In this document: positions 8,223-60,700 of the stretch, in pieces
Layout of the letters: the number at the start of each line of letters is the position of its first letter
Position numbering within the stretch: the first letter of the stretch is position 1
Source of the DNA: Macrostomum lignano
Lineage: Eukaryota
NCBI GenBank assembly: GCA_002269645.1
Contig: NIVC01000947.1
Location: 366,526-430,525 of the forward strand
Length of the DNA: 64,000 nucleotides
Direction: 5' to 3'
Program-made: the position numbers and the translations under genes
Notes under the pieces: model-generated
Told to the model about the DNA's origin: nothing
The model's input: the letters and a program-made list of their open reading frames with translations, nothing else
The model's database searches: none

Positions 8223-8669
8223 TGTTGCTTTGCTCAAAGTTTCTGAGAACAGTCTGTTTACTAGTTTAAGAATATGCAAGGTCTGAAATTTTCTAGCCCT
8301 TTGATGCAGTGAGGCGCCCCTCTGTGTATTTATCACTAATGGCAAGACAGATGTCTGCCGAGCCCCAGAACCGGGGGGGGGGGTCACAGAGGTAGAGAAG
8401 AGGTTTCATAGAACAATGGAACTCTGAGCAGTTGGAGCTGTGGGAGAGACTGTAGGGTTCTAGAAAATTCTGTGTGTGTGCTATCTGCCTGGGGCGCTGT
8501 GCTCGCATGTACAGCTGCTGCACACTGACTGCGTAAACTCTGCAAAATAATTGTGTAGATCTCGTGACTTGGCTGTTAAACTGTAGCTCAAGTGTTTTAC
8601 AAAGCATTAACGTGCACGTGTTTTATTTCTCAACTGCTTGAGCTGGCTTGGCTGTCTGCTGCACTGCAC

Positions 8670-10424: not shown

Positions 10425-12085
10425 GATGGAGTGACTGAGGATGGAGTGACAAGCGAGTGAGGATAGAGTGACAAGAGAGTGAGGATAGAGTGACAAGAGA
10501 GTGAAGATGGAGTGACTGAGGATGGAGTGACAAGAGAGTGAGGATAGAGTGACAAGAGAGTGAGGATAGAGTGACAAGAGAGTGAAGATGGAGTGACAAG
10601 AGAGTGAGGATAGAGTGACAAGAGAGTGAGGATAGAGTGACAAGAGAGTGAAGATGGAGTGACAAGAGAGTGAGGATAGAGTGACAAGAGAGTGAGGATG
10701 GAGTGACAAGAGAGTGAGGATGGAGTGACAAGAGAGTGAGGATAGAGTGACAAGAGAGTGAGGATAGAGTGACAAGAGAGTGAAGATGGAGTGACAAGAG
10801 AGTGAGGATAGAGTGACAAGAGAGTGAGGATGGAGTGACAAGAGAGTGAGGATGGAGTGACAAGAGAGTGAGGATAGAGTGACAAGAGAGTGAGGATGGA
10901 GTGACAAGAGAGTGAAGATGGAGTGACAAGAGTGTGAGGATAGAGTGACAAGAGTGTGAGGATGGAGTGACAAGAGAGTGAGGATAGAGTGACAAGAGAG
11001 TGAGGATAGAGTGACAAGAGAGTGAGGATAGAGTGACAAGAGAGTGAGGATGGAGTGACAAGAGAGTGAGGATGGAGTGACAAGAGAGTGAGGATGGAGT
11101 GACAAGAGAGTGAAGATGGAGTGACAAGAGAGTGAGGATAGAGTGACAAGAGAGTGAGGATAGAGTGACAAGAGAGTGAGGATAGAGTGACAAGAGAGTG
11201 AGGATGGAGTGACAAGAGAGTGAGGATGGAGTGACAAGAGAGTGAGGATGGAGTGACAAGAGAGTGAGGATGGAGTGACAAGAGAGTGAGGATGGAGTGA
11301 CTGCGGATGGAGTGACAAGAGTGTGAGGATGGAGTGACTAAAGATGGAGTGACAAGAGTGTGAGGATGGAGTGACTAAAGATGGAGTGACAAGAGTGTGA
11401 GGATGGAGTGAGTAAAGATGGAGTGACAAGAGTGTGAGGATGGAGTGAGTAAAGATGGAGTGACAAGAGTGTGAGGATAGAGTGACTGCGGATGGAGTGA
11501 CAAGAGTGTGAGGATGGAGTGACTGCGGATGGAGTGACAAGAGTGTGAGGATGGAGTGACTAAAGATGGAGTGACAAGAGTGTGAGGATAGAGTGACAAG
11601 AGAGTGAGGATAGAGTGTGACAAGAGAATGAGGATAGAGTGACAAGAGAGTGAGGATGGAGTGTGACAAGAGAATGAGGATAGAGTGACAAGAGAGTGAG
11701 GATGGAGTGACAAGAGAGTGAGGATGGAGTGTGACAAGAGAATGAGGATAGAGTGACAAGAGAGTGAGGATGGAGTGTGACAAGAGAATGAGGATAGAGT
11801 GACAAGAGAGTGAGGATGGAGTGACAAGAGTGTGAGGATGGAGTGACTAAAGATGGAGTGACAAGAGTGTGAGGATGGAGTGACTAAAGATGGAGTGACA
11901 AGAGTGTGAGGATAGAGTGACAAGAGAGTGAGGATGGAGTGACAAGAGAGTGAGGATGGAGTGACAAGAGTGTGAGGATGGAGTGAGTAAAGATGGAGTG
12001 ACAAGAGTGTGAGGATGGAGTGAGTAAAGATGGAGTGACAAGAGTGTGAGGATAGAGTGACAAGAGAGTGAGGATGGAGTGACAA
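10425..12085. repeat. Minisatellite, 22-bp unit (GAGTGACAAGAGAGTGAGGATG/A), ~1.65 kb
   Basis: gtgac recurs at 10681 and 10703; variant blocks toward the right end. Confidence 0.95.
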
Positions 12086-12371: not shown

Positions 12372-15300
12372 TCAATAAAATCGCTTCTTATTCCTCTGCT
12401 GGCGGGTGTGGTACACCAGGCCCAGCACCAGCAGGGTGACCAGGCCGATGGCGCAGAACAGAACCAGCAGGAAGATGCGCAGGAAGGACCAGCCACTGTC
12501 GGCTTGGGAGTCCACGTGAGCTGCCGAGTTGGGAGACGGGAGGAGCGATGGAGGAGAGGCACTGTGGAATCGTGGGGGGCATTGGGGAATTTGGGGGAGG
12601 CCACTGGGGAATCAGAGGGGGGATTGGGGAATCGGAGGGGGGATTGGGGAATTAGAGGGGATTGGGAATCAGAGAAGGAATTGGGGAATCAGAGGAGGAA
12701 TTGGGGAATCAGAGAGGGCACTGGGGAATCAGAGGGGGATTGGGGAATCAGAGAGGGCACTGGGGAATCAGAGAGGGGATTGGGAATCAGAGAAGGAATT
12801 GGGGAATCAGAGGAGGAATTGGGGAATCAGAGAGGGCACTGGGGAATCAGAGGGGGGATTGGGGAATCAGAGAGGGCACTGGGGAATCAAAGGATGAATT
12901 GGGGAATCAGAGAGGGCACTGGGGAATCAGAGAGGGCACTGGGGAATCAGAGAGGGCCCTGGGGAATCAGAGGGGGCACTGGGGAATCAGAGGGGGGATT
13001 GGGGAATCAGGGGGGCACTGGGGAATCAGAGGAGCCACTGGGGAGGCAGAGTTATCAATTAGCAAGCAGTCACGTGACTCACGCCTTGGAGGCTCGGCGC
13101 TGTCGGCAGAGGGCTCGATGGTCCGGTAGTCCACCCCTATGTTGTCCTCCAAAGGCTCTTTCTGTACAATCGGGGAAGCAGGGGTGAGGGTGTGAAATCT
13201 TGGACTAGCTTAGCACTGCGACTTCGGTGTTCTTCGAAAGCTGAGTTCTATCGATTCTGTGCGATCTCTATTCTGAGAATTCTGAGTTCAAGACACTTTT
13301 TTTCGTGTATTCCTTAATCCCTATTCCCCAAATCCCATATCCCTATTCCCAAACCCCAAATCCCATATCCCTATTACCCAAACCACAAATCCCATATCCC
13401 TATTACCCAAACCACAAATCCCATATCCTTATTACCCAAATCCCATATCCCTATTACCCAAACCACAAATCTTATATCCCTATTCCTTAAATCCCATATA
13501 CCTATTCCCAAAATTCCATACCCCTATTCTCTAAATCTCATATCTCTAAATCTCATATCCCTATTTCCCAAATCCCAAATCTCATATCCCTTTCCCCAAA
13601 CTCCTATTCTTTAATCCCCAAATCCCATATGCCCACATAGCAAATCCCGCCCCAAAATCCCGAACAGGGACATCCCTATTCCCAAAAAATCGCACCCTGT
13701 TCCTGGAACCCTAATCCCTGTTACTAAAGTCGCACATCCTGTTCCCAATTGGCAGACTGGCATGTACCGGTTCAATCTCGTAGACCTTCACAGACAGCAG
13801 GTCGTGATTATCCGACAGGTCGCCAGTCATAGCGCTGACTCCGAACACAAAATGAGTTGGCAATTTCACATTTGGCACTCGAAAGCACGGCTGCCAAATT
13901 TGCTTATTTTCAATATCCGTGGCCACCAATAAAGCGTTGTTGACGTAACGAATGGATAGCAGGGTGTCGTGATCCCGGTTTCTGAAGCGGGCGGTGCAGC
14001 CGTCTAGCTGAGAGTGGGTGCCGTCCCTGTCATGGTCATAGGCCAAGCTGCCATTGTTAACCATAGCCGATATGTATGGATGGTCGTGACTGTGCGGTCC
14101 ATTGTGGTTGCTGTAGGTGTCTAAAAGTACACCGAGGCCGCGGAATTTGTCTTGCATGCCGAACACGGGCCCGTTGAACTTGCTGACGGCCGGGTCAATG
14201 TACCAGAATGCAATGCCGTCGCCAAACAAATTTCCAGAGGAGCCGTGCACTCGGAAGTGCATCTGCACCTCCCAGTGACGCATTCGGACTGGGATTTTGC
14301 ACCATACAGCGCCTCGGTGCGACTGACTGTCCGGAGTTAGGCGAATGAAATCAGATGCAATCACTGTGCTGCCACCGAAGTCCCAGTGGCCTAAAGAGCG
14401 AGTAGAGTGTTGGAGATTCTTTATAGCTGACTGCCTGAGTGCAGAGTGATACCCAATGTCTCAGAGCACTAAAGACCAGCTTGGCAGTGAGTGAGTGCTA
14501 CCCCTTGACTAGATGTCAGTGAGTGAGTGCTACCCCTTGATTAGATGTCAGTGAGTGAGTGCTACCCCTTGATCAGATGTCAGTGAGTGAGTGCTACCCC
14601 TTGATCAGATGTCAGTGAGTGAGTGCTACCCCTTGATCAGATGTCAGTGAGTGAGTGCTACCCCTTGATCAGATGTCAGTGAGTGAGTGCTACCCCTTGA
14701 TCAGATGTCAGTGAGTGAGTGCTACCCCTTGATCAGATGTCAGTGAGTGAGTGCTACCCCTTGATCAGATGTCAGCTACTACTTGATCAGCCTGATAATG
14801 ACAGTGAAAATCATAAACAAAGATAAGCTTTTGCTTAGTTGGTTGGTATCTCATAGTCACTAATTGCTAGTATTTTGATACTGTTTGAGAATAAGAATAA
14901 GTAGTCTCAATAGATTAGGTCAATTTAGAAGTTAAGAAACTTTGTTAATACTTTTTTACTCTATACTACTATCAACATTCAATACATAAACATAACAATA
15001 TACACATGTATATTATATTTATAATTTATAATATCATAGATTTAAAAACAAAATTTATTGCTTGATTTACTTCTTGAGAGAAGTACTTTAGGCCCCCTTA
15101 TCCTATTTAAATACCCTATAAGATATGCTGTTTATCATCTACAAACAGATTATTAACTTTATAACAATCAAACCTTGTTTTGTGCTAGAATTTTACACGA
15201 AAAAGGCCATCTTCCTGACTATGGCCTTCATATGATCCATAGTCTGGATCATGCTAGGTGTACGCCGGAACAAAAATTGAATAATTACAAATACATGCCA

Positions 15301-29399: not shown

Positions 29400-31945
29400 G
29401 AAAAATAAAGTATCAAAATAGCGCACCTTAACTGCAGAGGGATCAAACCCAAAGTGAAAGAACTTAGATTTTGGCTCCGAACTAATAAAATAGGCACAGC
29501 CCTGTTCTCTGAAACAGTCCTCAGCTCCCCCGACCATGCTCATTTCCTGGTTACGGAACTGTTCATTTCGATACCCAGGACACAAAGAAAGGCCTCCTTG
29601 TCCACTCACCAAAGGTCCAAATCACAAACTATGCTCTGACCTACGACAAACACTCACTGGTCTACAGAAATTCTTCACTGGACCAGCTTGACACCAACCT
29701 CCTCTCCAGACTCCTTTCAGACAAACATAGCCTCCTGCTGGGGGACCTAAATGCTAGGCATGGGTTCCTTTGAAGTGAGAGTAGCTGTAACAGAGCAGGG
29801 AAGCAACTCCACGAGCAGGCAGCAAACAATAAAATCAACCCAGTCATCTATAGGAACGTTCTAGACTTGGGCATTTCGACAACTGACTTCAGCCCCTGGA
29901 TAAGCAAGTTCTACATCGGAGATGATGTGGGCAGTGACCATCTTCCCATCTTCGTCACCCTTAACTCCACACCCCCACCAGTCTGGTCAGGACCGGAAAA
30001 ACCAAAAAAACTTCAACAAAGTAGATTGGGACACCTTTCAAGCCCACTTAAGAGAAAACATGCTTCACAAAAAAGAAGACACAAGATCCCCTCTGGACTC
30101 TAAAATTGACCAGGAAGCCAAAACCATCACAGAAGTCATCCAAAAGACTATTGAAGAGGTTTTTCCAACCAGAAACCTTCAAAGACCTCTCCCTCCAGAT
30201 CTCCAACCAGACAAGAGATGACTCCTTCAGAAGGAAAGCCATCCAGATTGCCAAAGTAATTAGAAGAAAAATAGATGCTTTTAGGCTAGAAAACTTACCA
30301 AAATGTGAGAGAATAGTCGAAAACAGTAACAACAAAAAATCAAGGACTGCTGGAGAGACACTAAAGTTCTCATGGGCAAAAACAAAACAGGAACCATTCC
30401 TTCGCTTTCCACGGAAAGGAAACTGCTCACACTGACATTGACAAAGCAAACCTCATTGCAACCACTCTACAATAGGATTCATCCCATTTCATCCACCAGC
30501 ATTTTCTTTAAAGAAGAGGTTGAAAATGTGTGCAAACGAACCGAGTTCAAGCCCATCCCACAAGGCAGCTGTCAAGATAACGCATCCACTGGAGATCCCC
30601 TTTACTGCCTCTGACACAATCTGGGAGCTCGAACATCTTATTGTAAACAGCGCCCCTGGACTTGTCAAAATCTCCAACAAAGTCCTCGAATTTGGCCTTG
30701 AAGGCGTTGCGATCAACCGAATCACCAACCTATTCAACTCCTGCTTCAAAACAGGCATCTTTCCCACGACATGGAAGCAGGCGGTGGTCACAATGATCCC
30801 CAAACCTAACAAACGCTTGCAATCACCTAGCTCTTATAGACCAATTAGCCTACATCCTGCTTAGAAAAAGTCTTTGAAAAACTCCTGTTGAGAAGACTTA
30901 TGAAACACTTAGAAGCAAACAACACATTGGGTAGTGATCAGTGTGCTTACCGCAAGGTCCATTCTACACTTGATAATCTAGTTTGGCTCGTCCAGGATGC
31001 CCTGGTCGCTGAGGCAGAACACTTGAGATGCCTAGACATCTTCTTCGACGTGGAAGGCGCCTTTGACACAATCGTCCACGACTATCTCAGATACAAAATA
31101 TTCCAAGTCGATCTGCCAACAGCCATCACCCGGATTTGCTCCAACTACCTTGAAAACAGGAGTATGCAAGTTAAGGTCAACAGCGTCCTCAGTGACTTGT
31201 ATCAATTCATGGCAGGTGTCAGCACAATGCCCAAACGGGTCACCCAAATACATAAAGAAGTCAATTCGATGATGACATGGCCATCTGGGGCTTCGCCAAA
31301 TCTTTTGGGGAACTCCGAAATCAAATACAACCGTACCTGAACAGCATTTGGGCCTAGTTCGGAGAACAGGGTGTTAAAATCGATGCAAACAAAAGTCAAG
31401 CCACAGTCTTTAACTATGCCCCAGCAAACCCGGATAGAAGGGATATCAGACCCGAATTAAAACTAGGTGATGCAACTCTGACCTATCAAAAATAAGTAAA
31501 TTTCCTTGGCATCAATCTCGACTACAGACTCACTCTTAAAGCACCATGACCTATCCCTAATCTAGGTGCCCCAATCTAAGTACTCAAAAATGACAACATT
31601 ACAAAACTCCAACAAACGCAAAACCTTGCCGTCAAAATATGCTATGGCGCCCTAAGCTACACACAAATCAAATTCTTTATGAGCTAGCCGAAATGCCGAC
31701 AGGATCGTGGACCTGGGCGTAGGCTGGCTCAAAAGGCACAAAATGCCAATGCACAGGAATGTGAGAACGAACCAAACTTACCCAGAGCAGCTCAAAGAAA
31801 TCACCCGATCCTTAACAAGCTCTAGTGCAAACAAAGAGAGCTGGCCGCTTCTATGCTTCTGATCCCATCGAGATTAACAAATAAGGCAAAAAGAACCCTA
31901 AACAGCGATGCAGAAAAAAACCATCAAACAAAAAAACTTGCCGAA
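29400..31945 (+). pseudogene. Decayed I/Jockey-group LINE ORF2 (APE endonuclease plus RT) with A-rich tail
   Basis: IKIAHLNCRGI..ET; LLLGDLNARH; DDVGSDHLPI; WKQAVVTMIPKPNK..SSYRPISL; QCAYRKVHST; FFDVEGAFDTIVH. Many frameshifts. Confidence 0.85.
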
Positions 31946-32164
31946 GATAGTCGGACTGGCTCCCAAGCTAAATTCACATATCGTGAATTGACTGCGCAGG
32001 CGCCACACTGTGGATAACCTATCTTGCAGTGTCACTCAGGGTACGCGGACAATATCTTTTACCCATCAGCGACTGTATTAGGACTGTATTACTGTGCTAA
32101 ATCAGTAACATAATACTATCATTCCAGGTATTGGAAGCAGTCTGTAACACAATTTTGTACTTCA

Positions 32165-32603
32165 TGGAAGTTCCTGTGGCCATCCTGTCGACAGTGAGTA
32201 AGCGAGGGAAAAGGAAGCTGGCCTGTGAGGGCTATTATTACACCCTTGATAAGGTCAGTGTCGCTGATAAATCTGTAAGCTTTTGGGATTGCGAAGAAGG
32301 GCGGCACCATTCCTGCCCAGAGCGAATCCACATTCAGAATGGCATGCGGATTAAACAGCTGCATCATCATACTCATGGACCAGATGGTTCCAGGTATTTG
32401 GCCCTTAGCTGTGGGAAATATGAGAAGGGAGGCTGCGGATACACAAAATTCGACAGCAAATATCCTTGCAAATCATGGAGGCAACTTTCCTGATGCCGCT
32501 GTAGTTGCTTTACCGAAGCAAACGGTGCAAAACGTTGCCTCCAAAAGTTGTCCAAAACGTGCCCATTCAGCCACAAAGCCGCGTAGAACTGGTTCGAATC
32601 CAT
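32165..32603 (+). pseudogene. FLYWCH zinc-finger / MULE transposase N-terminal fragment
   Basis: SKRGKRKLACEGYYY..SFWDC....SCPERIH......HHHTHGPD, then a frameshift into a MULE-like helical segment. Confidence 0.7.
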
Positions 32604-32958
32604 AAAATTTTTGGCTTTAATTTGAAGTACTTTACTTACTACTGACGGGGGGCGCAGGCGCCGCGAATAGGCCGCGAGGCCCCTATCGCAACCTCAAGGT
32701 ATTTGAAGTAATTTTTAAAAGTTTTACTGTCTACTTGCACGAATCTGTGTCTTGATTTTTTTTCATGGCTCTGAAGTGCCTTCTGTTAGTTTAAGAAGAT
32801 TAAGAAGTAGAAGTTTGTGGATAGGAGACCATTAACCCTGCTTGATAAGAGAATAATCCTGTGGATTTCATTTCCAAAACAGACTGCTGATGGCACGACG
32901 CCAGGCGATGAGACTGCAGGCGAAGGAGGCGAGCAGCAGCAGCAGCAATCCGACACCC

Positions 32959-33048
32959 GGGGGACAAGAAGGCACCCTCCGAGCGAACACCATGGGGTCC
33001 CCGGACGCCCCGCGTCGCGCAACAGGACCGAGGCGACTAATGGCCTTC
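32959..33048 (+). ncRNA. HDV-like self-cleaving ribozyme at the 5' end of element A (enlarged L3)
   Basis: P1 GGGGAC/GTCCCC; P2 GAAGGC-A/T-g-GCCTTC; P3 CCC/GGG; L3 begins TCC and is 16 nt; P1.1 GG; P4 CGCC/GGCG; J4/2 CTAA (C33037). Confidence 0.65.
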
Positions 33049-36000
33049 ACAATCAGCGATGCTCCATATGGAGCGAGAGAGCCAATACTGCGTGCATGGA
33101 GACCGAACCTCAGCAACAACAACAACAAGGGCAACAGATCTCGACCGACGCCCCCCATGCTGAGAGCCTACCTACTGAACAAGTCCTGCGACTGCGAGGC
33201 GGTTGCGACCATCCTGACCGCCGACCCAAGCACGGCCGCCGGAGGAATACCGCGGAGTCGGGCCCAGAGCTCATCCTACAGTTCAACTGTAACGGCGTCA
33301 AGAGCCGTCATACTGAGCTGGCTAAATGGCTCCACGTCAATCGTCCGGCTGCGGTCCTACTGCAGGAAACGAAGCTTGCCAGAGACACAGATTACATCCC
33401 TCCTACCGGATACTACGTCGCCGCGCGCTGCGACGGTCTTCCTAAAGAGGCCGCCGGCACCCGGGCCACCGAGAACAAGGAAGGGGGGCACCTCTCCAGC
33501 CCACCCAACCCAGTGGCCCCGAAGCTAACCCTAACGAAGGGGCCAGCGCGGACAACTGCCCCACGCCATGGGCAAACTGCGGCCGCAAGATTAAGCGCCC
33601 ACGTTGCCGCATCCGCTGGCCGGCTGACAAGAATGATAAGGCGGAGTGGTGCCGCGGCTGCCGCTCAGGCAGAACCGCCTGCACCCGCAGAGACGAGCCG
33701 TGGCCACAACCACCGCAACCGCAGCCACAGGCCCAGACCCAGAGTGCGCAACACAATCGCGCCGACCGACAACCAACAGGAGCAGGCACGGAGGACCGCC
33801 GCCTCGAAGCCGCCAATAACTCGGCCCAAGAACAGGACGAACAAAGCGACCCACACCAGAGGAGGCACCCTGATCCTAGTGCGCGCCGACATTGCGTCCG
33901 ACACTACGCCATCGCCGCCGGACAACGAACGCCAACTGCTAGACTGCGCCACCGCCACCATCCACCTCAAAGGCCAGGAGCCGATCACGCTGGTTTCCCT
34001 CTACGCACCACCGACCAGCAACCAACGGGGGGAAACCTGGCAACCCCCGCTTCATCTGGTCCCGAACGCCACTGGCCCCACCGTCGTCGCCGGCGACTTC
34101 AACGCCCACGGCAGTTGGGACCGGCACCAAGACGAAGATGAGCGCGGCAAAATAGTGGAAGCCTGGGCGACCTCCCGCAACCTGAGACTTGCAAACGGCG
34201 ACTACCATACGCGAACTAACCCAGCAACAGGAGGCAAATCTACTCCGGACCTTACCTGGACCAGCAACAACCTCCTGCAAGGCATCGCGGAGGGCTGGAC
34301 GACCCTCGACGATCTGGGGTCCGACCATCTGCCCATCTCCTTCCCGGTCCAGAGACACCCCAGAGCGCCACGGAAGGGCAAGAACCTGCCACGGGCCACG
34401 TGGTGCTTCCGCAAAGCGGACTGGGGGAGCTTTAAGGACGAACTCACTAAGATCGACGGCCAAAGGGCTGACTACCCAACTCACGGCGTCCAACTCGCAC
34501 ATCTTCACGCCATCATCTGTAACGACATTCTAACGGCCGCTGCCCATAACATACCCAAAGGGGCCAGAACTGCTGCGAAACCATTCTGGACTGACGCCTG
34601 CGCCCAAGCCACCCGGGAGTGCAAAGAAGCCCGGCACGTCGCCGAGCTGTCCCCGAGCGACGACAACCTGGCTAGGTTCAAAGCGGCCCGTAACAACTCC
34701 AGAAAGGTGATCCGCCAGGAGAAACGCCGCGCCTGGAGCGAGAAGGCAGCTGAGCTCACCATCAACAGCGACCTTTTCCGCACTCTGCGCCAGATGCGTG
34801 GCGATGGCCCCAAACCAAATAGCGGCGCCTCCCTCCAGAGAAAGAAGACGGGGCAGCAAGAACCATCTCGGCCGGCCCGCACCAACCTGGAGAAGGCCAA
34901 CCTGTTCTGTCAGCAATACGCCGCTGTCTCTAGAGTTAAAGGAGGCCCCCAAGACGCCCACACCAATCAAGCCGCGAGAGCAGCCCTCAACTCCAGCTGC
35001 ACGTGCAATGGCTCACGCACCGACATGTGCTCCGCCTTCAGCCTGACCGAATACCGCAGCGCTGTGCGCTCGCTCAAATCCGGGAAGGCACCAGGCCCGG
35101 ACGGAGTTACCAACGACATGCTTAAAAGACTCCCACCGACCACGGACCTGAGGCTCCTGGACCTCATCAACCGGTCTTGGAAGGAAGGAGACTGCCCGAT
35201 GCAATGGAAGAAATCGGTCATCATACCTATCCCCAAGAAAGGGAAAGACCCTAGTAACCCGGAGTCCTACCGCCCAGTGGCACTCACCAGCAGCATCGCC
35301 AAACTGGCCGAACGGATGGTGCTCCAACGCCTGCGCTTTGCCCTCGAGAATTCTGGCCGCCTCAGCAGTACCCAGGCCGGCTTCCGCCGCGGCCGCTCTA
35401 CTGAGGAACTCATCGCGAGCACCTGCCAGGACATCTTTGACGGTCTGGAGGCGGTCCCACACCTGCGGTCAGTGCTGTGCCTTCTCGACTTTAGTCGTGC
35501 TTACGACCGGGTCTGGAGGGCTGGGCTGATCGCCAAGCTGAAAAAGCTCGGCATCCCTAACGACGTGCTCCGCTGGATCCGGAGCTTCCTTGCCGACCGA
35601 CGTGCCCGCGTACGAGTCGGCAACTGCCTGAGCAATGAAAGAATCTTCAAGGAAGGCCTCCCCCAGGGCAGCGTGCTGGCTCCCCTGCTCTGGGTCGTCT
35701 ACATCAACGACCTGGACACGGAGATTAAAGAGGCCCATACGGACTGCAAACTGAAGCTCTACGCAGACGACAGCGCCCTCCTGGCCACCGACCGGAGTCT
35801 CGACGCCTGCGCTGCGAAGCTCCAACCTGCCCTGGACGCTGTGCACAAATGGTGTCAGACGTGGAAAGTGGAGCTGAGCGCTGCGAAATGCGTCTACGGA
35901 ACTTTCACCCTGGACCCCAAGGAAACCAACGGAAAGAAGAAGGTCAGCCTCACCATCGGTGGCCAACCGCTGGCCCATGACCCAGCGCCACGCTACCTGG

Positions 36001-37583
36001 GAGTGCGCCTCGACGACCAGCTCGCATTCAACAAACAGGGGGCCGACGTCCGCGCTCGTATGTGCGCTCGGCGCCGTCCGCTTGCGGCGCTAGCCAACCG
36101 CAGCACCGGAGCCGACCACCATACGCTGAGAGCCGCCTACGTCAGCACTGTCAGGGCTGTCGCCGACTACGCCGCGGGCACCTGGCTCTGCGGGGCAGCC
36201 CCCTCAACAAGGCACTCCATCGAGCGTCAACAGGCTGCCTGTGCCAGGATCATCACAGGCTGCATCCTTCCTTCGGACACGCGAAGCGTTCTCCGTCTTG
36301 CCGAGCTCCCACCGGTCAGCCACGTCGCCTCCGAAAGAGCCGCCCGCCTCCGGGAAAGGATCCTGAGATTGGGCCCAGGCGCAGCAGCACACGAACCTGC
36401 TACCAGGAGCACGCGCCCGAGGCTGAAGAACCGCACCTACGAGGCTGGGCAGAGGAGACCAACGACAACGGACGCCCAAATTGACACGCCCCACATCGAC
36501 CTCAGAGACACTAGGCGCCCTTTCCGCAACTGCTGGCGCCGAGCGGCACTAGAGATGCCAGCCAGCGTCGATCTCGACCAGTACATCAGAGACGACATAT
36601 GTAGTCCCGGTATCGCTCCCTGGGAGGCACACACGGACAGAATCCGGTTCTGTCTGGAGGCAGCCTCGAGGTGCAGCAAATCGGACCCGTCCGCCGACCG
36701 GAACGCAGCCGCCCGCGACACCCTGGAGGACCTACCTGAAGCAGACATCAACATTTGGACGGACGGCTCCGTTGCCGACGGCACAGGGCCAGGAGGCAGC
36801 GCCGCCATCATCGGTACTAACCTGGTGACCTTCGTCCGGAAGAGCCCAGCTGGCCGCTTCTGCAGCTCATTCGACGCTGAGATGCGCGCTATCAAAGACG
36901 CCCTCACCTTTGTCGCGGAGAAGATCGCCCCTCGCGCAGCCCGCATCCGGCTGTGCAGCGACTCGCTATCGTCGCTCACGGCCCTGCAAGCGGGCCCCCT
37001 AGATCAGCGCACCGAGAGTGGCCTCTCCTGCTGGCGTTTCCTCATCAGCCTGGGCACCTGCGACCTCAATGATATTGACCTCGCCTGGGTCCCTGCCCAC
37101 TGCGGCATACCCGCTAACGAAGCGCGGACAGAGCTGCGAACGCCGCAGCCCGCTTGCCGCAAACCACGGCTGCCATTTCGCTGGGCGCTGCCAAGGCTGC
37201 CATCCGCCGTGACCGCCGTGCGCTGGACGACAGCGCTATGCCCCGGCCTGGCCAACCTTCCACGCTAGAAGCCGGACCGAGCACACGGCGGTCTGCCAAC
37301 TCCGAGCCGGTGCCTCAATGCTCGCCGCCGAGGTCCGACACCGTTTCGGCCTGACGGACTCCCCGCTCTGCCAGGACTGCGGGGCACCGGACTCGAGCCT
37401 GCACGCGATCTACAGCTGCCCGAGGGGGGACGCGCACCGCACTCGCCTGGTCGGCACTGAAGTGGAGCGCCTCCTTACCGAACCGGGCTTGGCCCTCTCG
37501 CTCCTCCGGAACATGGGGCGTTGGCCCCCGTCTATTTCGGCGCCGCCGCGCCGCTGACGAGCGCATGAGAAGAAAGAAAAAGA
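32959..37583 (+). mobile_element. Ingi-like (I-group) non-LTR retrotransposon A: single ORF APE-RT-RNase H-CCHC, near-intact (two frameshifts near the C-terminus)
   Basis: LQFNCNG, LQETKL, VAGDFNAH, LGSDHLPI; LPQGSVL, YADD (35760); RNase H WTDGS..AEMRAI..SDSLS..WVPAHCGIPANE; CQDC..H...C. GAA-rich tail; flanked by 12-bp TSD AATCCGACACCC. Confidence 0.92.
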
Positions 37584-37595
37584 AATCCGACACCC

Positions 37596-37673
37596 GGGGG
37601 CTTGGAGACGACGTCCACGACGTGCCCCTGGACCGACCGAGAAATCGCGTCGGAGTACCGACTAACGGTCTCC
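37596..37673 (+). ncRNA. HDV-like self-cleaving ribozyme at the 5' end of element B
   Basis: P1 GGGGGC/GCCCCT with G1-U wobble; P2 GGAGAC-G/C-g-GTCTCC; P3 ACG/CGT; L3 TCCACGA; P1.1 GG; P4 CCGAC/GTCGG with a GAAA loop; J4/2 CTAA (C37662). Confidence 0.8.
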
Positions 37674-40600
37674 CCTACCACCGAACCTGCGAAGAGATGC
37701 ACACGGTGCTCAGGCTGCGAGGCGGCGACTCCACCATCGCCCCAGCCAACCACCGCAAGACACGCCGTACACGCCGTAGCGCCCGGAAACGTCGAGACGG
37801 ACGGCCCAGCGCAGAGCCGGATCAAGAGCTCCGAGCGCTTCAGTTCAACGCCAACGGACTGAAAGCACGCCTCACAGAGCTGACCCATTGGCTCGCCAAG
37901 AACCGCCCGGCCCTCGTCCTCATCCAGGAGACAAAGCTCGTGCCCGACGAGGAGTTCACCCCACCAACCGACTACTGCATCGCAGCGCGAGTCGACGGAC
38001 TCCCCTACAACGAGGAAACGGAGAGCGCTCGAGACGACAACACGGACACCAACAATGCCGGCACCCAACAACAGCAACAGCAACGACCTGTGGCCCGCAC
38101 CGCGACCAGGCGAGTGACGAGACCACGGTGCCGCCTCCGTTTCCCAGACGATCGGGCCAGATGGTGCCGCGGATGCCGCAGTGGACGTACCGCCTGTACC
38201 GAACGCGACGCCCCGTGGCCAGGCACAGATGCAGGCCCCGAGCAAACCGAGGCCGGAGAACGAGAGGAGACGGGCGCGCCACTAGCCGGGAGAAAACCAA
38301 AAAGGCAAAAAAAATCAACCGGCAGGGGCGGCGTCCTGATCATGACTCGCTCGGACGTGAGGTACAGCACACTACCCACGATCCCACAGGACCAAGGCAA
38401 ACTCGATGCGGCCGCCATCATCCTTCACATCACTGGCAAGTCCCCCATCACCGTCGTTAATATCTACGCCCCGCCAACCAGCGCCCAGCGCCAGGACACT
38501 TGGGCTCCGAACTTCGACACCCTGCCCGTGGGCCCCAACTCCATCATCTGTGGCGATTTCAACGGCCACGGCTGCTGGGACAGGTGGACGATGAAGACGC
38601 TAGGGGACACCTCATCGAACACTGGAGCGCGACTAACGGCCTCCACGTCTGTAACGGAACCAGCCACACCAGGAGCAGCCCGAGCAGCGGATCCCGGAGC
38701 TCACCCGATCTGACGCTGGCAAAGGGATTCCTGACCGCGATCATCCCGGCGGGTTGGAGGACCGAAAAGGATATGGGCAGCGACCATCTCCCCATCACCT
38801 TCCCGCTGGCAATGGCAAGGCGCGAACTCAAGCACGGTATCACTCGCTGGAGCTTCGCCAAGGCCGACTGGCCCGCCTTCAGACAACATCTAGCCGACAT
38901 CCAAGGACCCCAGGACTGGGGTGACGTGGACCCTGAACACGCGGCCCTCTGCGCCGACATCATCGAGGCCGCCACTCAGGCGATCCCCAGAGGCAGCCCC
39001 AAAAACAACCGCTGCCCTTTCTGGACCCCAGACTGCGAAATCAGCCGGCAAGCCTGCATCAGAGCAAGGGCGACGGCCGAGTCCGACCCGACCCCAGAAA
39101 ACCTCGCGGCCTACAACGCAGCTCGACATACCGCCAGCAATACCATCCGCAAAGAGCGCAGAGGCTTCCTGGAAGACCGCGCCAGCGAAATGACGGTTGA
39201 TAGCAACCTCTTCCGGCTCCTGCGCGCAGCCAGAGGAGATACGCCAGTCCCGCGCGGCAAAGTCGACATCACCCGGAAGTCGGCCGACGGCGTCGAGCTC
39301 CGACCGGCGCGCACCGACAAAGAAAAGGCAGACACTTTCTGCCAAATCTACGCCGCTGCCGCCAGGGTCCCCCGCCGACAGGAGGACTACAAGATCCGCT
39401 ACGAGGCAAGACGCGCCAGGAGACGACCAGCCCAGCCGCCGGTACCCTTCACTCTCCTGGAGCTCAGATCAGCTATCCGACAACTCAAATCCGGCAAAAG
39501 CGCCGGAGATGACGGCGTTACGAACGAGATGCTCAAACGCCTCCCACCGGCCACCGACCAACGCCTCCTGGACCTCATCAACCGCACGTGGATACAACAG
39601 CGCTGCCCCAGAAGCTGGAGGTCGGCAATCATCATCCCAATTGCCAAAAAAGGAAAAGACGCTACCCTCCCAACATCCTACCGACCGGTGGCCCTTACGA
39701 GCTGCATCGCCAAATGTGCGGAGAGGATGGTGCTCCAAAGACTCAACCGCCAGCTCGAAACCAACGGCTCCCTGTCCCCGGCACAAGCCGGATTTCGCAG
39801 AGGCCGCAGCACCGAGGAGCAGCTCGCCAGGGTCTGTCAGGACATCTTCGACGGCCTGGAACGCTCTCCACCGCACAGGAGCATCCTCGCGTGCATGGAC
39901 TTCAAAGGAGCCTACGAAACGGTCTGGAAGGAAGGCCTCGTTGTGAAGATGACTCGAGTAAAGATTGACCAGAACATCATCGGCTGGACGGAAGCCTTCC
40001 TTTCCGACCGACGCGCAAGAGTCCGCTTCGGGCGCACCCTGAGCTGCCAGCGCGTCTTCCGAGAGGGACTCCCACAAGGCTCGGTCCTGGCGCCAACTCT
40101 CTGGAACATCTACGTGAATGACCTAGAGAAGGCAGTCACGACAGCAGCGCCGGACTGCGGCATCAGCCTCTACGCCGATGATTCGGCTGTCCTCAGCACC
40201 CAGCCCTCACTGGCGGGCTGCGGAGCCAGGATACAACCGGCACTCGACGCTATAGCCAACTGGACCAAAGAGTGGAAAATCACCCTGAGTACCAGCAAGT
40301 GCAACTACTCAACATTCACGCTCGCCCCCAACGAGGTGAATGGCAAGCTCCGGGTCCCGCTCGAGCTAGCCGGCGAGCCACTCCAGTTTGAAGAACACCC
40401 GACCTTCCTGGGCCTCATCCTGGACTGCCAGCTGAACTTCGCCAAGCACGCAGCCAACGTCTGCCGCCGCATGAGCCGACGCCGACGCGCTCTCGCCGAC
40501 CTCGCGAACCGCGCGGTAGGAGCCACCCAGGAGGTGCTCCGGACGGCCTACCAGGCAACCATCCGCGCCGTGGCCGAATACGGATGCGGAGTCTGGGGAG

Positions 40601-41977
40601 CCAGCGCGGCACCGAGTACCAAACTGCTTATCGAACAGCAACAGAACAGCTGCGCAAGAATCATCACCGGATGCATGCTCCCAACTCGAACCACGGAGCT
40701 GCTTCGGACGGCCAACCTCCCCCCCTTTGGCCACACCATCCTGGAACGCGCCGCCTGCCTCCGAGAACGGGTGCTGCGCCTCCCGGAGGACGTCCCAGCA
40801 CACCGGACTGCGGCCAGAGACACCACCAGCAGACTACGAAACCGCGCCTACGAGAGCGCCCGCCGACAAGAAGAGGCAATTTTTAACGCGCTACTAGACA
40901 ACGACTACAAGCGCCCTTTCCGCGGCTGCTGGCGGCGAATCGCGAGAGAAATCACCGGCCCCTGCGGCCTCGAAGACCGGCCCAGAGAGCCGTTCCCGCC
41001 ACCGCCGCCCGATCTGGCACACCTCGCGCTCAACCGGTACAGCCAGACTTTCGACCTCACCCTCGCCGACGGCTGCGGCAGAGCAGTCCCGACGAGCGTC
41101 CGCCGCGACAGGGCGATGTCAGCTCTCGAGCAGCTGACACCCTGTGACATCGACGCGTGGACGGACGGCAGCGTCAAGGAGGGCATCCACGACGCATGGG
41201 GCGCCGCGGTGGTCTGCACCCGCCTCTGGTGTCAAAAGATCACCGCCCCGGCTGGCCGGATCGCATGCAGCTTCCAGGCGGAGATGGTCGCGATCAGCGC
41301 CGCCCTCGACTACATTACTCAACTCCCGCCAGAGCACGGCCTTACAGTGCGGATCCTCAGCGACTCCAAATCAGCACTCACGGCCCTCCAGAGCGGCCCC
41401 AGTAGGCAGGTCACCGCCGCCGGAAGCCGCTGCTGGGAGGTACTGGCCCACATGTCGCGCCCGTGCGAATTCGTCTGGGTTCCGGCCCACTGCGACGTCC
41501 CGGGCAACGAGCAAGCAGACCGCTGCGCCAACGAAGCTAGACGCGGCCAACAGCAGGACGAACCCATTACGCTGCAGGCCGCCAAGGCCGCCATCCGACG
41601 CGCGCGGTCCGCCCAAGACCAGGAACTGCTTGGACGCCCCTGGCAACGACCACCACGACACCTGACCAGGAAAGAAACGGTGGCGATTAACCAACTCAGA
41701 GCCGGGTGCTCCACCCTGGCCGGGGCCACACGTCACCGGGTCGGCCTGACTGAGAACGCCAGCTGTCCCGACTGCGGGGCGCCCGACACGGAGGAGCATA
41801 TCATCCTTGAATGCCCACGCGGCGACGCCCTTCGGGCGAGCACTGAGGACGAGAGGGACATCCGCGACGACCCGGAGCGCCTTCTCGCCCTCCTTCGCAG
41901 GTTGGGGCGCCTCTGAGCGCCCTCCCCCCAGCTGCCAGCGGCAGCGTTGTGGGGCGGTGGAAGAAAAGAAGAAGAAG
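37596..41977 (+). mobile_element. Ingi-like non-LTR retrotransposon B: APE-RT-RNase H-CCHC, one frameshift (~38580), stop at 41916
   Basis: LQFNANG, IQETKL, ICGDFNGH, MGSDHLPI; LPQGSVL, YADD (40171); WTDGS..AEMVAI..SDSKS..WVPAHCDVPGNE; CPDC..H...C. (GAA)n tail; same 12-bp TSD. Confidence 0.92.
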
Positions 41978-42309
41978 AATCCGACACCCCGCTATTTGGC
42001 ATTGGCCCATCTAATGTAAGTGGCAAATTTTTTTAGTGAATCAAAACGTATACGAAAACAGTTTTAAGAGCGAATAGCATAATTTTGGTATTGAATACCT
42101 CCATCTTAGTCTTCTAGCACTTAATTGAAAAATTAAAGCTTAGTTTCTATAGTGCAACGTTTCGACCCTTCATGTATCGAAGAATCATAAAAATGTTTAA
42201 AAAGTTGAATATCTAAGATGGATTCTAAAATATTTTTGAAGAGATTCATTGTTACACAGCGAGGACTACTTTTTTGTATTATAAAATGCGTAATTTAAAA
42301 TGTATCTTA

Positions 42310-57790: not shown

Positions 57791-60700
57791 AAAGCGTGGG
57801 TATTTTAGCAGCTTTTGCATCGGTGGTGAAGAATCAATGTTATTTGCGATAAAACTTCTTTTCTTAACGCACAGGCGCTACAATCTGCCTGAAGCTAATG
57901 AGGTCGGCATCATTCGCGCGACCTCGCGCGATGTTTTGATTGAGCTTCGCCATCCAGAAGACGGAAACCACAGGCGTTACCATTCAGTCTCAGTGACCCA
58001 TCGGGCCTACGACGCACTGCAGTACTTGCTGCTTTTGCCGTACGGACAAGACGGCTAGCATCCGGAACTGCGAATGACCAATGGCGGAAGGCTGACGCCC
58101 AGAAAGTATTACGCTGGCGAAGTTATGGTGCGGCCGGACCGGTTCAATCCGCTTCTGTATGGTCGGCGCCTGTTTCAGCAGTATCTCGTGGATATGTGCG
58201 CCAAAATTGAGGCAGAGAGATTAACGTACCTGCGCACGCACTAAGACGACCTTCGCAGCGAAACGTACAGCGGCCTGCGAGACGCGCTGTTTGCTGAGGA
58301 CGGATTGCGAAAGGATTCCAACCCCAATGAGGTCGGAAAGCCAGTCATTTTGTCGTCAAGCTTTGTTGGCGGGCCTCGCTATATGATGGAGCGACTGCAG
58401 GATGCAATGGCCTACGTGCATAAGTTTGGCAAGCCAGACTTGTTCGTAACAGCCACCTGCAACCCGAAGTGGCAGGAGATTACCGACGAGCTGCTGCCCG
58501 GACAGAAGCCAGAGGACAGGCCTGACATTGTCACTAGGGTGCTTGAGCTGAAAAAGAAGGCTCTGATGGCCCAGCTCAAGACATGCTTTGGAAAGGTGGC
58601 TGCACACGTCTGCGCTCTGGAGTGCCAGAAGCGCGGTGAGTCAGTTTACAGTACGCGTATATTGCAATAGAAGGATATGAAATTTTCGTTACATTTTTGC
58701 AAGTTTTGAGAAATTTGTTCATGCTGTGCTTTCTTAGCTTTAGGATGAAGTGCTTTTTTCTGAAAGGAATGCTCATGAGTATTTCAAATTATTCCCCAGA
58801 GAGATGTATTGTACATAAAACAGACTCACACTAGCAACTTGTACCTGACACAGCATTGTATGATTCATTTGTGCAACTCAGGTCTGCCGCATGTGCATGT
58901 ACTGCTCTGGATGGTCAGCCGGGATAGAGTGACTCCTGACCGATACGACGAGATTGTTTCGGCGGAGATTCCGGATCCCCATACTCAACCGGAACTGCAT
59001 GAACTTGTCAAAACCCATTTGATTCACGAGCCATGTGTTAAGGTGAATCCCAATTGTCCCTGCATGGAAAATGGCAAGTGTAGCAAGGAATTTCCAAAGG
59101 ATTTCCTGCCGGCTACAATGTTCACTGACGCTGGCTACCCGCGGTACAGAAGGCGTTCCCCAGAAATGGGCGGATTCGAGGTAGACAAGCCGTTCAGAGG
59201 CGCAAGCGTCCGCATGGACAATCGGTATGTGCTCTGTGCAACACATGAAACTCCTTCCTTAGATTGCACCTGGCATTGATGCTCACTCTTTGACAATTTA
59301 TATCCCACCAGTTCAACGCTCACTCTGTGGAATTCGGTTGATTTTATCTTCTATTTTCTGAATTGTCATTGTGCTTTGCATTCTATTATTTACTATTAAC
59401 TGTATAATCGTATTTATTGCATTTCGTGTTAAAAATACTTATTGTTCGTATTAATAATTTATTATTATGAAATTCATTCACAACTGAAATTCATTAATTG
59501 AGTTTTCAAAGACATTCACATTTACAATGAACAATGCCGTGATCATTGACTCAACACAATTTTTCTTTTTTTGATTCAATTTAGGTCTGTCGTGCCTTAT
59601 AACCCGAGTTTGCTGCTGGAGTTTGCATGTCACAATAATGTGGAGATCAGTGCCACAGTCAAGTCCGTCAAGTACATAATTAAGTATTTGCTGAAGAATG
59701 GCGACATGGCGACTTTCCGAGTGACACGGGCCAACAATTCGCCACAGCCAGAGCAGGCGGGAAACGCGGAGACGCCGCAGCCGGCTGATCAGCAGCAGAA
59801 TCAGCCTGTACCAGTTCGAGACGAAATCTCAGAGTACCTGTCCGCTCGATACATAGGACCAATGGAAGCTGTTAATATCATTCTGGGATTTGAAGTAAGT
59901 CTACAAAGTTTACTTGTATACTCGTAGATTTTTATTTTCACTTTCTCCCGCTGACTGCTCTTGCATAAGGCTGTTGAGTCTCGATTTTCAATCTGCTGCA
60001 TATTTTAGAACACCCGGAATGCTGACCAAGTCAGGAAAAAAAGTAATGCACGTACGATCGTAGCCTGAGAACTTATCAACTGTAGCACCTAATCCTTCAT
60101 GAATATAATTTTCTATCATAGTTACCTGACAACAGTACAGTAATTTCTGTTAATAGCATGTTTGGTGCAGTGCCTGATTTGTGTATTGTTTGCCTTAACT
60201 GCATCCAAGCAGCGAAGTTTTCTAACTGCAGTGAGCTACAGTTTTTGGAATTCCAACATTCCACCAGGTGCACAACAGGTTCCCAGCGGTTATTCGTCTC
60301 TGCGTTCACGAGCGAAATAAGCAGCTGGTGTATTTCAACGAAGCCACCGCGAGCGTCAGGGCAAGGGCGCCGAGAGATTCGACGCTAACGGCTTTTTTTA
60401 ACCTGTGCCGAACTGACGAGTTTGCTCGGACTCTAATACACGGAAATACCGTCCTACTTCATCTGCACCAGAGCGCCAGAGAGTGGCGTCGGGCCAAGCG
60501 GGGCCAGCAAGTCGAAGGACATCCAGGTGTGTAGCGCAACACCAACATTTCACGGATGTATACGGTGTCTCCAAGGGCAGGAGAGCTGTTCTTCGTCCGC
60601 CTCCTTCTGCTGCATGTGCGGGGACCGACCAGCTATGAGGCACTGCGGACTGTCGATGGCGTGCTGCACAACCATGCGAGAGATGCTTGCATGGCTCTCG

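What the first reader, a model, noticed from the sequence alone, without database searches (positions are those of the whole stretch)
33183..37726. Ubiquitin C-terminal motif VLRLRGG at the N-terminus of both Ingi-like retroposon proteins: candidate deubiquitinase-cleaved processing signal
Seen in sequence: element A encodes ...PTEQ-VLRLRGG|CDHP (33183-33203) and element B encodes M-HT-VLRLRGG|DSTI (37706-37726). Each lies about 25-35 aa before the first APE motif (LQFNxNG). The flanking residues are unalignable and the codons differ (CTG CGA CTG CGA GGC GGT vs CTC AGG CTG CGA GGC GGC), so conservation is at the protein level. Established: VLRLRGG is the exact C-terminus of ubiquitin and DUBs cut after the GG. 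L1Tc and several APE-type LINEs carry a 2A-like peptide at this position, and cytopathic pestiviruses use captured ubiquitin as a cleavage signal. Inference: these elements use a minimal ubiquitin-tail mimic, without the ubiquitin fold, so a host DUB releases the EN-RT-RNase H protein from any upstream leader. I cannot confirm that this is undescribed.
Basis: partly seen in the sequence, partly recalled or inferred. Interest (0 to 1): 0.92.

Follow-up and report, generated by a model that had tools for sequence, protein, structure and literature searches.

The report
Ubiquitin-tail motif heading flatworm LINE proteins
Two jumping genes in this window, and a third in the flatworm Macrostomum lignano, carry the last seven amino acids of ubiquitin just ahead of their enzyme domains, where their relatives carry a self-separating 2A peptide. 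This points to a new, still untested way for such elements to free their protein from whatever is translated upstream.

Summary
VLRLRGG lies at 33183-33203 (element A) and 37706-37726 (element B), in frame and 24 and 37 residues before the endonuclease motif LQFN. About 0.002 occurrences are expected by chance in the window.

A third family, element C in Macrostomum lignano, has the motif at the same place. The three are only 44-50% identical in protein. Every motif codon differs synonymously between them and none differs non-synonymously.

A, B and C form one clade (89% bootstrap). Its nearest relatives carry a 2A peptide plus a PHD finger at this position, so the ubiquitin tail replaced 2A here.

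No ubiquitin fold precedes the motif by Pfam, phmmer or AlphaFold2. No protease domain was detected in the elements. No paper found describes this.

Cleavage is inferred, not shown. Most deubiquitinases need folded ubiquitin; the ZUFSP/ZUP1 class cleaves the bare RLRGG peptide efficiently.

Best reading (about 0.45): a ubiquitin-derived separation site cut by a host protease. The "Ingi-like" label is unverified. Novelty: a new variant of a known kind. Interest about 0.68.

The parts
32882..32948 (+). Short GC-rich 3' fragment (X) of a further element, ending in (CAG)nCAA. It is the first unit of a head-to-tail array. The start coordinate is approximate.
   Evidence: Composition jump and alignment with the 3' ends of A and B.
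32949..37585 (+). Element A: a single-ORF non-LTR retrotransposon with leader, VLRLRGG, basic linker, APE, RT and RNase H. Its 3' end carries frameshifts, so the CCHC motif is out of frame. It ends in a purine-rich tail.
   Evidence: ORF 32817..37268. Pfam: Exo_endo_phos, Exo_endo_phos_2, RVT_1, and RNase_H at 25.3 bits against a 25.8 cut-off. At least two frameshifts at 37120-37270.
32949..32963 (+). Junction sequence TCCGACACCCGGGGG at the start of A. In the ORF frame it reads SDTRG.
   Evidence: Exact 10-mer at 32949, 37586 and 41980. The 15-mer is shared by A and B (family D10).
33096..33098 (+). First in-frame ATG inside element A, 28 codons after this Met and before the motif. The frame is open all the way from the 5' junction.
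   Evidence: frame 0 of the 234-nt leader has no stop, and its only Met is at codon 50.
33183..33203 (+). VLRLRGG motif of element A, followed by Cys.
33204..33275 (+). Basic linker CDHPDRRPKHGRRRNTAESGPELI between the motif and the APE domain.
33276..34337 (+). APE endonuclease of A, from LQFNCNG to SDHLPI, with a long low-complexity loop containing a WCxGC Cys motif.
   Evidence: (core pLDDT above 80).
35229..36008 (+). Reverse transcriptase domain of A.
   Evidence: Pfam RVT_1, E = 9.6e-35.
36744..37124 (+). RNase H domain of A.
   Evidence: Pfam RNase_H, E = 2e-5, just below the gathering score. Aligns with the RNase H of B.
37369..37422 (+). C-terminal CCHC motif of A (CQDCGAPDSSLHAIYSCP), now out of frame.
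37586..41979 (+). Element B: the same architecture as A, 47% identical to it in protein. It has one frameshift near 38585, an intact RT-RNase H-CCHC part and a purine-rich tail.
   Evidence: ORFs 37565..38713 and 38500..41916. Pfam. BLASTP. Frameshift.
37697..37699 (+). First ATG inside element B, three codons before the motif (M-H-T-VLRLRGG).
37706..37726 (+). VLRLRGG motif of element B, followed by Asp.
37727..37837 (+). Basic linker of B (DSTIAPANHRKTRRTRRSARKRRDGRPSAEPDQELRA).
37838..38796 (+). APE endonuclease of B, with the frameshift near 38585.
39643..40344 (+). Reverse transcriptase domain of B.
   Evidence: Pfam RVT_1, E = 1.1e-35.
41155..41538 (+). RNase H domain of B.
   Evidence: Pfam RNase_H, 36.2 bits against a 25.8 cut-off.
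41764..41817 (+). C-terminal CCHC motif of B (CPDCGAPDTEEHIILECP).
41980..41989 (+). Third copy of TCCGACACCC, directly after the tail of B and followed by AT-rich host DNA.

Best explanation
VLRLRGG is a piece of ubiquitin, its C-terminal tail. It was taken up once by a flatworm (Macrostomum-type) lineage of single-ORF APE-RT-RNase H LINEs, where it replaced the ancestral N-terminal module of a 2A 'StopGo' peptide followed by a PHD finger.

It most likely does the job that 2A does in the relatives. It separates the EN-RT-RNase H protein from whatever has been translated upstream: the element's own short, non-conserved leader, or a host exon or upstream array member read in frame.

The proposed mechanism is proteolytic. 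A host cysteine protease that recognises the R-x-R-G-G tail without needing the ubiquitin body would cut after Gly-Gly. A ZUFSP/ZUP1-type DUB is the best candidate class. The cut would leave Asp (B, C) or Cys (A) as the new N-terminus.

Shown:
- The motif is present, in frame and at the same position in three families.
- It is under protein-level constraint.
- The three families are monophyletic and nested among 2A-bearing families.
- No ubiquitin fold precedes the motif, and Pfam detects no protease domain in the elements.

Inferred:
- Origin from ubiquitin.
- Functional equivalence to 2A.
- Cleavage, and the identity of the protease.
For: 1. The motif occurs in three families that share only 44-50% protein identity. 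All 7 residues are invariant and all 7 codons vary synonymously. The surrounding leader is almost unalignable.
2. Chance predicts about 0.002 occurrences per window.
3. Element C keeps LH-VLRLRGG, matching 9 of the last 10 residues of ubiquitin, LHLVLRLRGG (ubiquitin sequence from established knowledge). This argues for derivation from ubiquitin.
4. A, B and C are monophyletic in 89 of 100 NJ bootstraps on 522 columns.
5. The nearest outgroups all carry 2A plus PHD before the APE domain: P0016/L005 RDIHPNPGP, P0014-15/L003 DGIETN(R)PGP, P0247 GIEPKPGP, and the barnacle element L001/P0018 GDVETNPGP.
6. Of the 65 relatives whose APE start motif was recognised, 27 have NPGP upstream of it. Only the M. 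lignano proteins have the ubiquitin tail.
7. The layout is parallel. In several 2A relatives a basic stretch follows the 2A (for example NRNRHNRNRR and TNRNRGKRSK), as it follows GG here.
8. Published work places 2A 40-80 residues from the N-terminus of single-ORF APE LINEs and shows those 2As to be active (PMC3708506, PMC3894237).
9. The leader frame is open from the 5' junction in A, B and C. Element C is fused in frame to a host C2H2/polyQ exon in the annotated M. lignano gene models, and an uninterrupted paralogue exists.
10. The motif lies in a segment predicted to be disordered: residues 1-88 have pLDDT below 50. That would make it accessible.
11. ZUFSP-family DUBs cleave bare RLRGG-AMC with kcat 6.6-95.6 per second and Km about 90 uM (PMC8776766).
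Against: 1. No cleavage data exist.
2. Most DUB classes require a folded ubiquitin, so a bare tail would be a very poor substrate for them.
3. ZUFSP activity was measured on an AMC amide, not on a peptide bond to a protein. ZUFSP genes are missing from many taxa, and I could not check the host.
4. If translation starts at the element's own ATG, the leader removed is only 3 residues before the motif in B. The benefit of removing it is not obvious unless upstream fusions matter.
5. Only three families, from one or two genomes, were available.
6. All copies examined are defective: frameshifts in A and B, truncation and a stop in C.
7. An Asp or Cys N-terminus would be destabilising under the Arg/N-degron rule (established knowledge). 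That is odd for an element, unless low protein levels are favoured.
Confidence: 0.45

Rival explanations
1. The motif comes from ubiquitin and is under selection, but it is not a cleavage site. It would work as an uncut docking or pseudo-substrate peptide that recruits or occupies a ubiquitin-tail-binding enzyme (a DUB or similar). Alternatively it is simply part of an N-terminal basic/RGG region used for nuclear or nucleolar targeting or for RNA binding.
For: Protein-level constraint is shown but cleavage is not. Most DUBs bind the bare tail poorly and rarely turn it over. The motif is followed by a strongly basic stretch in all three families.
Against: An NLS or RGG role would not require exact identity to seven ubiquitin residues across families that are 44-50% identical. 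The only known generic activity directed at an internal, N-terminally placed ubiquitin tail is hydrolysis after GG. The slot is occupied by a proven separation element (2A) in the sister families.
Confidence: 0.22
2. Active master copies carry a complete ubiquitin (or ubiquitin-like fold) before the motif, as in natural ubiquitin fusions or cytopathic pestiviruses. The copies seen here would have lost it through 5' truncation or decay.
For: Ordinary DUBs need the fold. All three copies are defective somewhere. A has 78 and C about 80 open codons before the motif, which is roughly the length of ubiquitin.
Against: Three diverged families all lack any ubiquitin signal upstream (Pfam at E<=10; phmmer with --max). 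AlphaFold2 predicts no structure for residues 1-88 of A. B has only 40 codons between its 5' junction and the motif, and it shares that junction sequence with A. B and C share a leader block (VHDxPLD) that is not ubiquitin-like. No ubiquitin ORF is found in any frame of the window or of L001-L005.
Confidence: 0.06
3. The match to ubiquitin is a coincidence. The seven residues are either inherited without function or conserved as a nucleic-acid signal, such as an internal promoter or an RNA structure.
For: Only three sequences share one ancestor. LINE 5' regions often hold internal promoters (established knowledge).
Against: Synonymous positions are nearly saturated: A and C differ at 7 of 7 third positions, and one Arg codon is CGA, AGG or CGT. 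No amino-acid change occurs. This excludes a DNA or RNA signal and neutral inheritance. Chance predicts about 0.002 occurrences per window. C extends the ubiquitin match to LH-VLRLRGG.
Confidence: 0.04

Closest known systems
N-terminal 2A ('StopGo') peptides of single-ORF APE-type non-LTR retrotransposons (L1Tc, Ingi, Ingi-1_AC, CR1, Rex1, L2; Heras 2006; Odon 2013, PMC3708506)
   Same: The position in the protein is the same: tens of residues from the N-terminus and upstream of the APE domain. The elements are of the same kind (single ORF, no ORF1), and a basic linker often follows. The nearest relatives of A, B and C carry 2A plus PHD here.
   Different: There is no D(V/I)ExNPGP motif anywhere in A or B. 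2A acts on the ribosome during translation and leaves Pro as the new N-terminus. A ubiquitin tail would need a trans-acting protease and leaves Asp or Cys. A, B and C also lack the PHD finger that follows 2A in their sister families.
Natural ubiquitin-fusion precursors (polyubiquitin, UBA52, RPS27A) and ubiquitin insertions in cytopathic pestivirus polyproteins
   Same: The same LRLRGG sequence sits immediately before the protein to be released, and cleavage after GG by host DUBs is the expected chemistry. RPS27A also has a basic extension after GG (established knowledge).
   Different: Those systems carry the whole 76-residue beta-grasp domain, which ordinary DUBs require. Here only 7-10 residues of ubiquitin are present and no fold is detectable.
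LXGG cleavage sites of viral papain-like proteases (coronavirus PLpro and relatives) and RLRGG-peptide cleavage by ZUFSP/ZUP1 deubiquitinases (PMC8776766)
   Same: These are short ubiquitin-tail-like peptides recognised and cut without a ubiquitin body. ZUFSP enzymes recognise the R-x-R motif through acidic residues.
   Different: Viruses encode their own protease, whereas Pfam detects no protease domain in these elements. ZUFSP activity on a genuine peptide bond in a protein context, and its presence in the host flatworm, are untested.

Membership tests
APE-type single-ORF non-LTR retrotransposon with RNase H (I/Ingi/Nimb group) | APE endonuclease followed by a reverse transcriptase in one ORF | tested here: met
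   Pfam Exo_endo_phos, Exo_endo_phos_2 and RVT_1 in A and B.
APE-type single-ORF non-LTR retrotransposon with RNase H (I/Ingi/Nimb group) | RNase H domain after the RT, and a C-terminal CCHC motif | tested here: met
   B scores 36.2 bits for RNase_H against a 25.8 cut-off. A scores 25.3, just below the cut-off, but aligns with B. The CCHC motif is at 41764-41817 in B and at 37369-37422, out of frame, in A.
APE-type single-ORF non-LTR retrotransposon with RNase H (I/Ingi/Nimb group) | No separate ORF1 (gag-like) upstream | tested here: met
   Only 234 nt (A) and 120 nt (B) lie between the 5' junction and the motif, all in the ORF frame.
Ingi clade specifically | RT-domain phylogeny groups the element with Ingi/L1Tc reference sequences (RTclass1-type test) | not tested
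The best database relatives are unnamed proteins from a barnacle, fish, a tapeworm, insects and metagenomes.
2A / StopGo recoding element | C-terminal consensus D(V/I)ExNPG|P | tested here: not met
   No NPGP or D/GxExNP in the ORF frame of A or B. It is present in sister families.
Ubiquitin or ubiquitin-like fusion domain | Beta-grasp fold of about 70 residues preceding the tail | tested here: not met
   Pfam finds nothing at E<=10. phmmer with ubiquitin finds nothing beyond the tail. AlphaFold2 gives pLDDT below 50 and no secondary structure for residues 1-88 (the alignment was shallow).
Ubiquitin or ubiquitin-like fusion domain | C-terminal LRLRGG directly preceding the released protein | tested here: met
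   VLRLRGG is exact in A, B and C.
Ubiquitin or ubiquitin-like fusion domain | Hydrolysis after Gly76 by a deubiquitinase | not testable with these tools
   This needs reporter assays or N-terminal mapping.
Viral-type LXGG polyprotein site | A papain-like, OTU or other protease encoded by the same element | tested here: not met
   Only the APE, RT and RNase H domains are detected by Pfam.

The most novel reading that the evidence does not exclude
A natural ubiquitin tail without the fold, 7-10 residues long, works in vivo as a self-contained protein-separation tag. In a flatworm LINE lineage it replaced the ribosomal 2A skip. A host tail-specific DUB (ZUFSP-like) cuts it, freeing the EN-RT protein from host-exon or upstream-element fusions. 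The same cut sets a destabilising Asp/Cys N-terminus on the enzyme and a Gly-Gly C-terminus on the discarded leader.
Probability: 0.35. Interest if true: 0.85.

Novelty: new variant of a known kind. Interest (0 to 1): 0.68.

Why it matters
If the motif is cleaved, it would be the first case I know of in which a transposable element uses host deubiquitinase specificity, rather than 2A skipping or its own protease, to release its replication protein.

It would also be a natural example of a ubiquitin tail working without the ubiquitin body. That would give ZUFSP-type, or other tail-recognising, DUBs a physiological linear substrate.

It would show that 2A and a ubiquitin tail are interchangeable solutions to one problem. 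That in turn would constrain what the problem is: release from upstream-translated sequence, or dosing of ORF2 protein.

Practically, it could offer a very short host-cleaved tag for co-expression.

Macrostomum lignano is transgenic-tractable, so the question can be tested directly.

Tried and rejected
- **Ubiquitin fold upstream of the motif.** Pfam at E<=10, phmmer --max with ubiquitin against all 246 relatives and six-frame ORFs of the window and L001-L005, and AlphaFold2 found nothing.
- **Protein search with the A N-terminus.** The query was swamped by low-complexity words and returned only 12 hits.
- **Motif-centred profile search (A1).** It gave 120 candidates and one irrelevant hit.
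- **Exhaustive representative search.** This found the one extra instance, P0120.
- **Metagenome scan with the leader+APE profile.** It gave 10 distant loci, three with 2A+PHD and none with the ubiquitin tail.
- **Exact look-up of window proteins.** None is in the collection, so the source species stays unconfirmed. blastn of the window against the two M. lignano loci found only about 66% RT similarity.
- **P0017, a fourth M. lignano family.** Its N-terminus is missing and no DNA is on record.
- **Rfam on the whole window.** No match.
- **Nucleic-acid signal.** Rejected because of the synonymous variation.
- **Element-encoded protease.** Rejected because Pfam finds only APE, RT and RNase H.
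- **TCCGACACCC as a target inside a ubiquitin or RNA gene.** There is no support, and the nature of this junction remains open.
- **Literature.** No paper combines LRLRGG with retrotransposon. The two LINE 2A papers never mention ubiquitin.

Full report
**What is in the window**

The stretch 32.9-42.0 kb is a GC-rich island (55-66% GC) in AT-rich DNA. It holds two head-to-tail non-LTR retrotransposons on the + strand.

- Element A (32949-37585) has one long ORF (32817..37268) with APE, RT and RNase H domains.
- Element B (37586-41979) has the same domains in two frames (37565..38713 and 38500..41916), plus a C-terminal CCHC motif.
- A and B are 47% identical over about 1000 residues and 38% identical over the N-terminal part.
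- Both copies are dead. B has a frameshift near 38585. A has at least two near 37120-37270, which put its CCHC motif (37369-37422) out of frame.
- No ORF1 is present.

Surrounding genes indicate an animal genome: a FLYWCH zinc finger at 32131-32493 and a legume-like lectin exon at 13711-14364.

**Checking the observation**

VLRLRGG is encoded at 33183-33203 and 37706-37726, in the ORF frame. These are the only two occurrences in six frames. Composition predicts 0.0017 occurrences per window. The motif ends 24 (A) and 37 (B) residues before LQFNxNG, the first APE motif. The flanks do not align.

**A third, independent instance**

An exhaustive HMMER search of 1.84 billion representative proteins with the A N-terminus plus APE returned one further protein that matches from the motif onwards. 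This is P0120 = PAA56246.1 of Macrostomum lignano (the assembly GCA_002269645.1 is identified as M. lignano).

- Its locus L002 holds element C, which is 48% identical to A and 44% to B. It also sits as a GC-rich island in AT-rich DNA.
- It reads NLHR-VLRLRGG-DSNV, 29 residues before LQFNCNG.
- With LH-VLRLRGG it matches 9 of the last 10 residues of ubiquitin. This points to real derivation from ubiquitin rather than convergence.
- A second locus (L004, P0246) is the same insertion duplicated.

Across A, B and C every one of the seven codons varies at synonymous positions. The codons are Val GTC/GTG/GTT, Leu CTG/CTC/CTC, Arg CGA/AGG/CGT, Leu CTG/CTG/CTA, Arg CGA/CGA/CGC, Gly GGC/GGC/GGA and Gly GGT/GGC/GGC. 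No amino-acid change occurs. The leader around the motif is almost unalignable. This is strong evidence for selection on the peptide, and it excludes a DNA or RNA signal.

**Phylogenetic context**

On 522 columns (APE C-terminus to RT), A, B and C form a clade in 89 of 100 NJ bootstraps. The closest outgroups all have a 2A-like peptide followed by a PHD finger ahead of the APE domain:

| Family / locus | 2A-like sequence |
|---|---|
| P0016/P0162, locus L005 | RDIHPNPGP |
| P0014/15/P0196, locus L003 | DGIETN(R)PGP, decayed |
| P0247 | GIEPKPGP |
| Barnacle family, L001/P0018 | GDVETNPGP plus two PHD fingers |

Of the 65 relatives whose APE start motif was recognised, 27 carry NPGP upstream of it. 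Only the M. lignano proteins carry the ubiquitin tail. An APE-domain NJ tree gives the same picture. The ubiquitin tail is therefore a derived state that replaced 2A(+PHD) once, in a lineage so far seen only in Macrostomum-like genomes.

Published work shows that 2A peptides in this position, 40-80 residues from the N-terminus of single-ORF APE LINEs and sometimes followed by PHD, are active recoding elements. That work never mentions ubiquitin (PMC3708506, PMC3894237).

**No ubiquitin fold and no own protease**

- Pfam finds no ubiquitin family upstream even at E<=10.
- phmmer with ubiquitin finds nothing beyond the tail in any relative or in any frame of the window and L001-L005.
- AlphaFold2 models the APE core confidently but gives pLDDT below 50 and no secondary structure for residues 1-88 of A, which include the motif. 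The alignment was shallow, so this is supportive only.
- B has only 40 codons between its 5' junction and the motif, and its own first ATG is three codons before it.
- Pfam detects no protease domain in the elements.

**How it most likely works**

The parallel layout is leader, separation motif, basic linker, APE. Together with the replacement of 2A within a 2A-bearing clade, this makes a separation function the most economical reading.

The leader frame is open from the 5' junction in all three elements. This is weak evidence on its own, because other frames are also partly open in this GC-rich DNA. Element C is fused in frame to the coding exon of a host C2H2/polyQ gene in the annotated gene models, and an uninterrupted paralogue, P0245, exists. 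Upstream fusions are therefore a realistic situation for these elements.

The chemistry would be hydrolysis after GG by a host enzyme. According to Hermanns et al. 2022 (PMC8776766):

- UCHL3 and PLpro cut RLRGG-AMC orders of magnitude worse than Ub-AMC.
- All ZUFSP/ZUP1-type DUBs tested (human, insect, plant, fission yeast) are highly active on bare RLRGG-AMC. They have kcat 6.6-95.6 per second and Km about 90 uM, and recognise the R-x-R motif.

A tail-only site is therefore biochemically possible, but it points to a particular enzyme class. I could not check whether the host has it. Activity on a true peptide bond is also untested.

Two corollaries are inference only. The released protein would start with Asp or Cys, both destabilising N-terminal residues. 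The discarded leader would end in Gly-Gly.

**Rivals**

- An uncut docking or targeting peptide. This is possible, but it does not explain exact identity to ubiquitin or the 2A slot.
- A lost full ubiquitin in the master copies. This is unlikely, given three families and B's short leader.
- Coincidence or a nucleic-acid signal. This is excluded by the codon pattern.

**Comparison with known systems, and novelty**

In position and presumed role the motif resembles the LINE 2A. In sequence it resembles ubiquitin-fusion precursors and pestivirus ubiquitin insertions. In being fold-less it resembles viral LXGG sites and ZUFSP peptide substrates. It is a member of none of these: there is no NPGP, no beta-grasp domain and no own protease.

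Full-text searches found no paper combining LRLRGG with retrotransposons, and none describing ubiquitin sequences in non-LTR elements. I rate it a new variant of a known kind.

The 'Ingi-like' label fits the architecture but was not tested against reference RT sequences.

**Limits**

- Only three families, from one or two genomes.
- All copies are defective.
- No expression or cleavage data.
- The source species of the window is not confirmed.
- The trees are simple NJ trees.

**Verdict**

- Observation: confirmed and extended.
- Interpretation: partly supported.
- Best explanation: confidence about 0.45.
- Interest: 0.68.

Noticed in passing
window 32949-32958, 37586-37595, 41980-41989: The exact 10-mer TCCGACACCC marks every junction of a head-to-tail array: X fragment, then A, then B, then host DNA. 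Each copy directly follows a purine-rich or (CAG)n tail. A and B share 15 nt (TCCGACACCCGGGGG) even though they are only about 66% identical in DNA. It could be the conserved 3' terminus of these elements, their 5' terminus, or a duplicated target site. Element C has a similar ACCGATACCCCGATCGGG about 20 nt inside its 5' junction.
   Followed up: partly
L002:1066-2160 and L004:10001-11080 (M. lignano): Element C is inserted in frame into the coding exon of a host polyQ/C2H2 zinc-finger gene (junction ...QQSLM|WDRTVKR). It is annotated as a host-LINE fusion protein (PAA56246.1, PAA91395.1). The paralogue PAA93933.1 is uninterrupted.
   Followed up: partly
window 33640-33710 and 38160-38225; P0246 residues ~520-580: The APE domains carry a long low-complexity loop with a conserved Cys motif (R..CR.R......WC.GC.....C). 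It is shared by A, B, C and the barnacle relatives. In the L004 copy of C (P0246) this loop also holds a PHD-like finger, which is an unusual place for one.
   Followed up: no
window 32131-32493 (+): An ORF with a FLYWCH zinc-finger domain (Pfam E = 4.5e-11) lies just upstream of the LINE array.
   Followed up: no
window 30520-31340 (+) and about 29385: Fragments of a different, AT-rich LINE: an RT fragment 28-44% identical to A, and a separate LQFNC APE start with stop codons nearby.
   Followed up: no
window 13711-14364 (-): An exon encoding a legume-like lectin domain (ERGIC-53/VIP36-type; Pfam E = 1.2e-76). It is probably a genuine host gene and a good marker for identifying the source species.
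   Followed up: no
window 8000-12000: Extreme strand asymmetry (GC skew +0.55 to +0.71, AT skew +0.33) with several long minus-strand ORFs (up to 503 aa) that have no Pfam match. It looks like a compositionally odd repeat or low-complexity coding region.
   Followed up: no
window 60556-61290 (+): An ORF ending in the N-terminal part of a PIF1-like helicase (Pfam E = 2.6e-19), possibly part of a Helitron-type element.
   Followed up: no
window 32890-33528 (+): A 212-codon ORF in another frame overlaps the leader and the APE start of element A. It is probably just a by-product of the high GC content.
   Followed up: no
P0017 (UniRef100_A0A1I8I140, M. lignano): A fourth related family in M. lignano groups near A, B and C in the NJ tree. 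Its predicted protein starts inside the APE domain and no DNA was retrievable, so whether it has the motif is unknown.
   Followed up: partly
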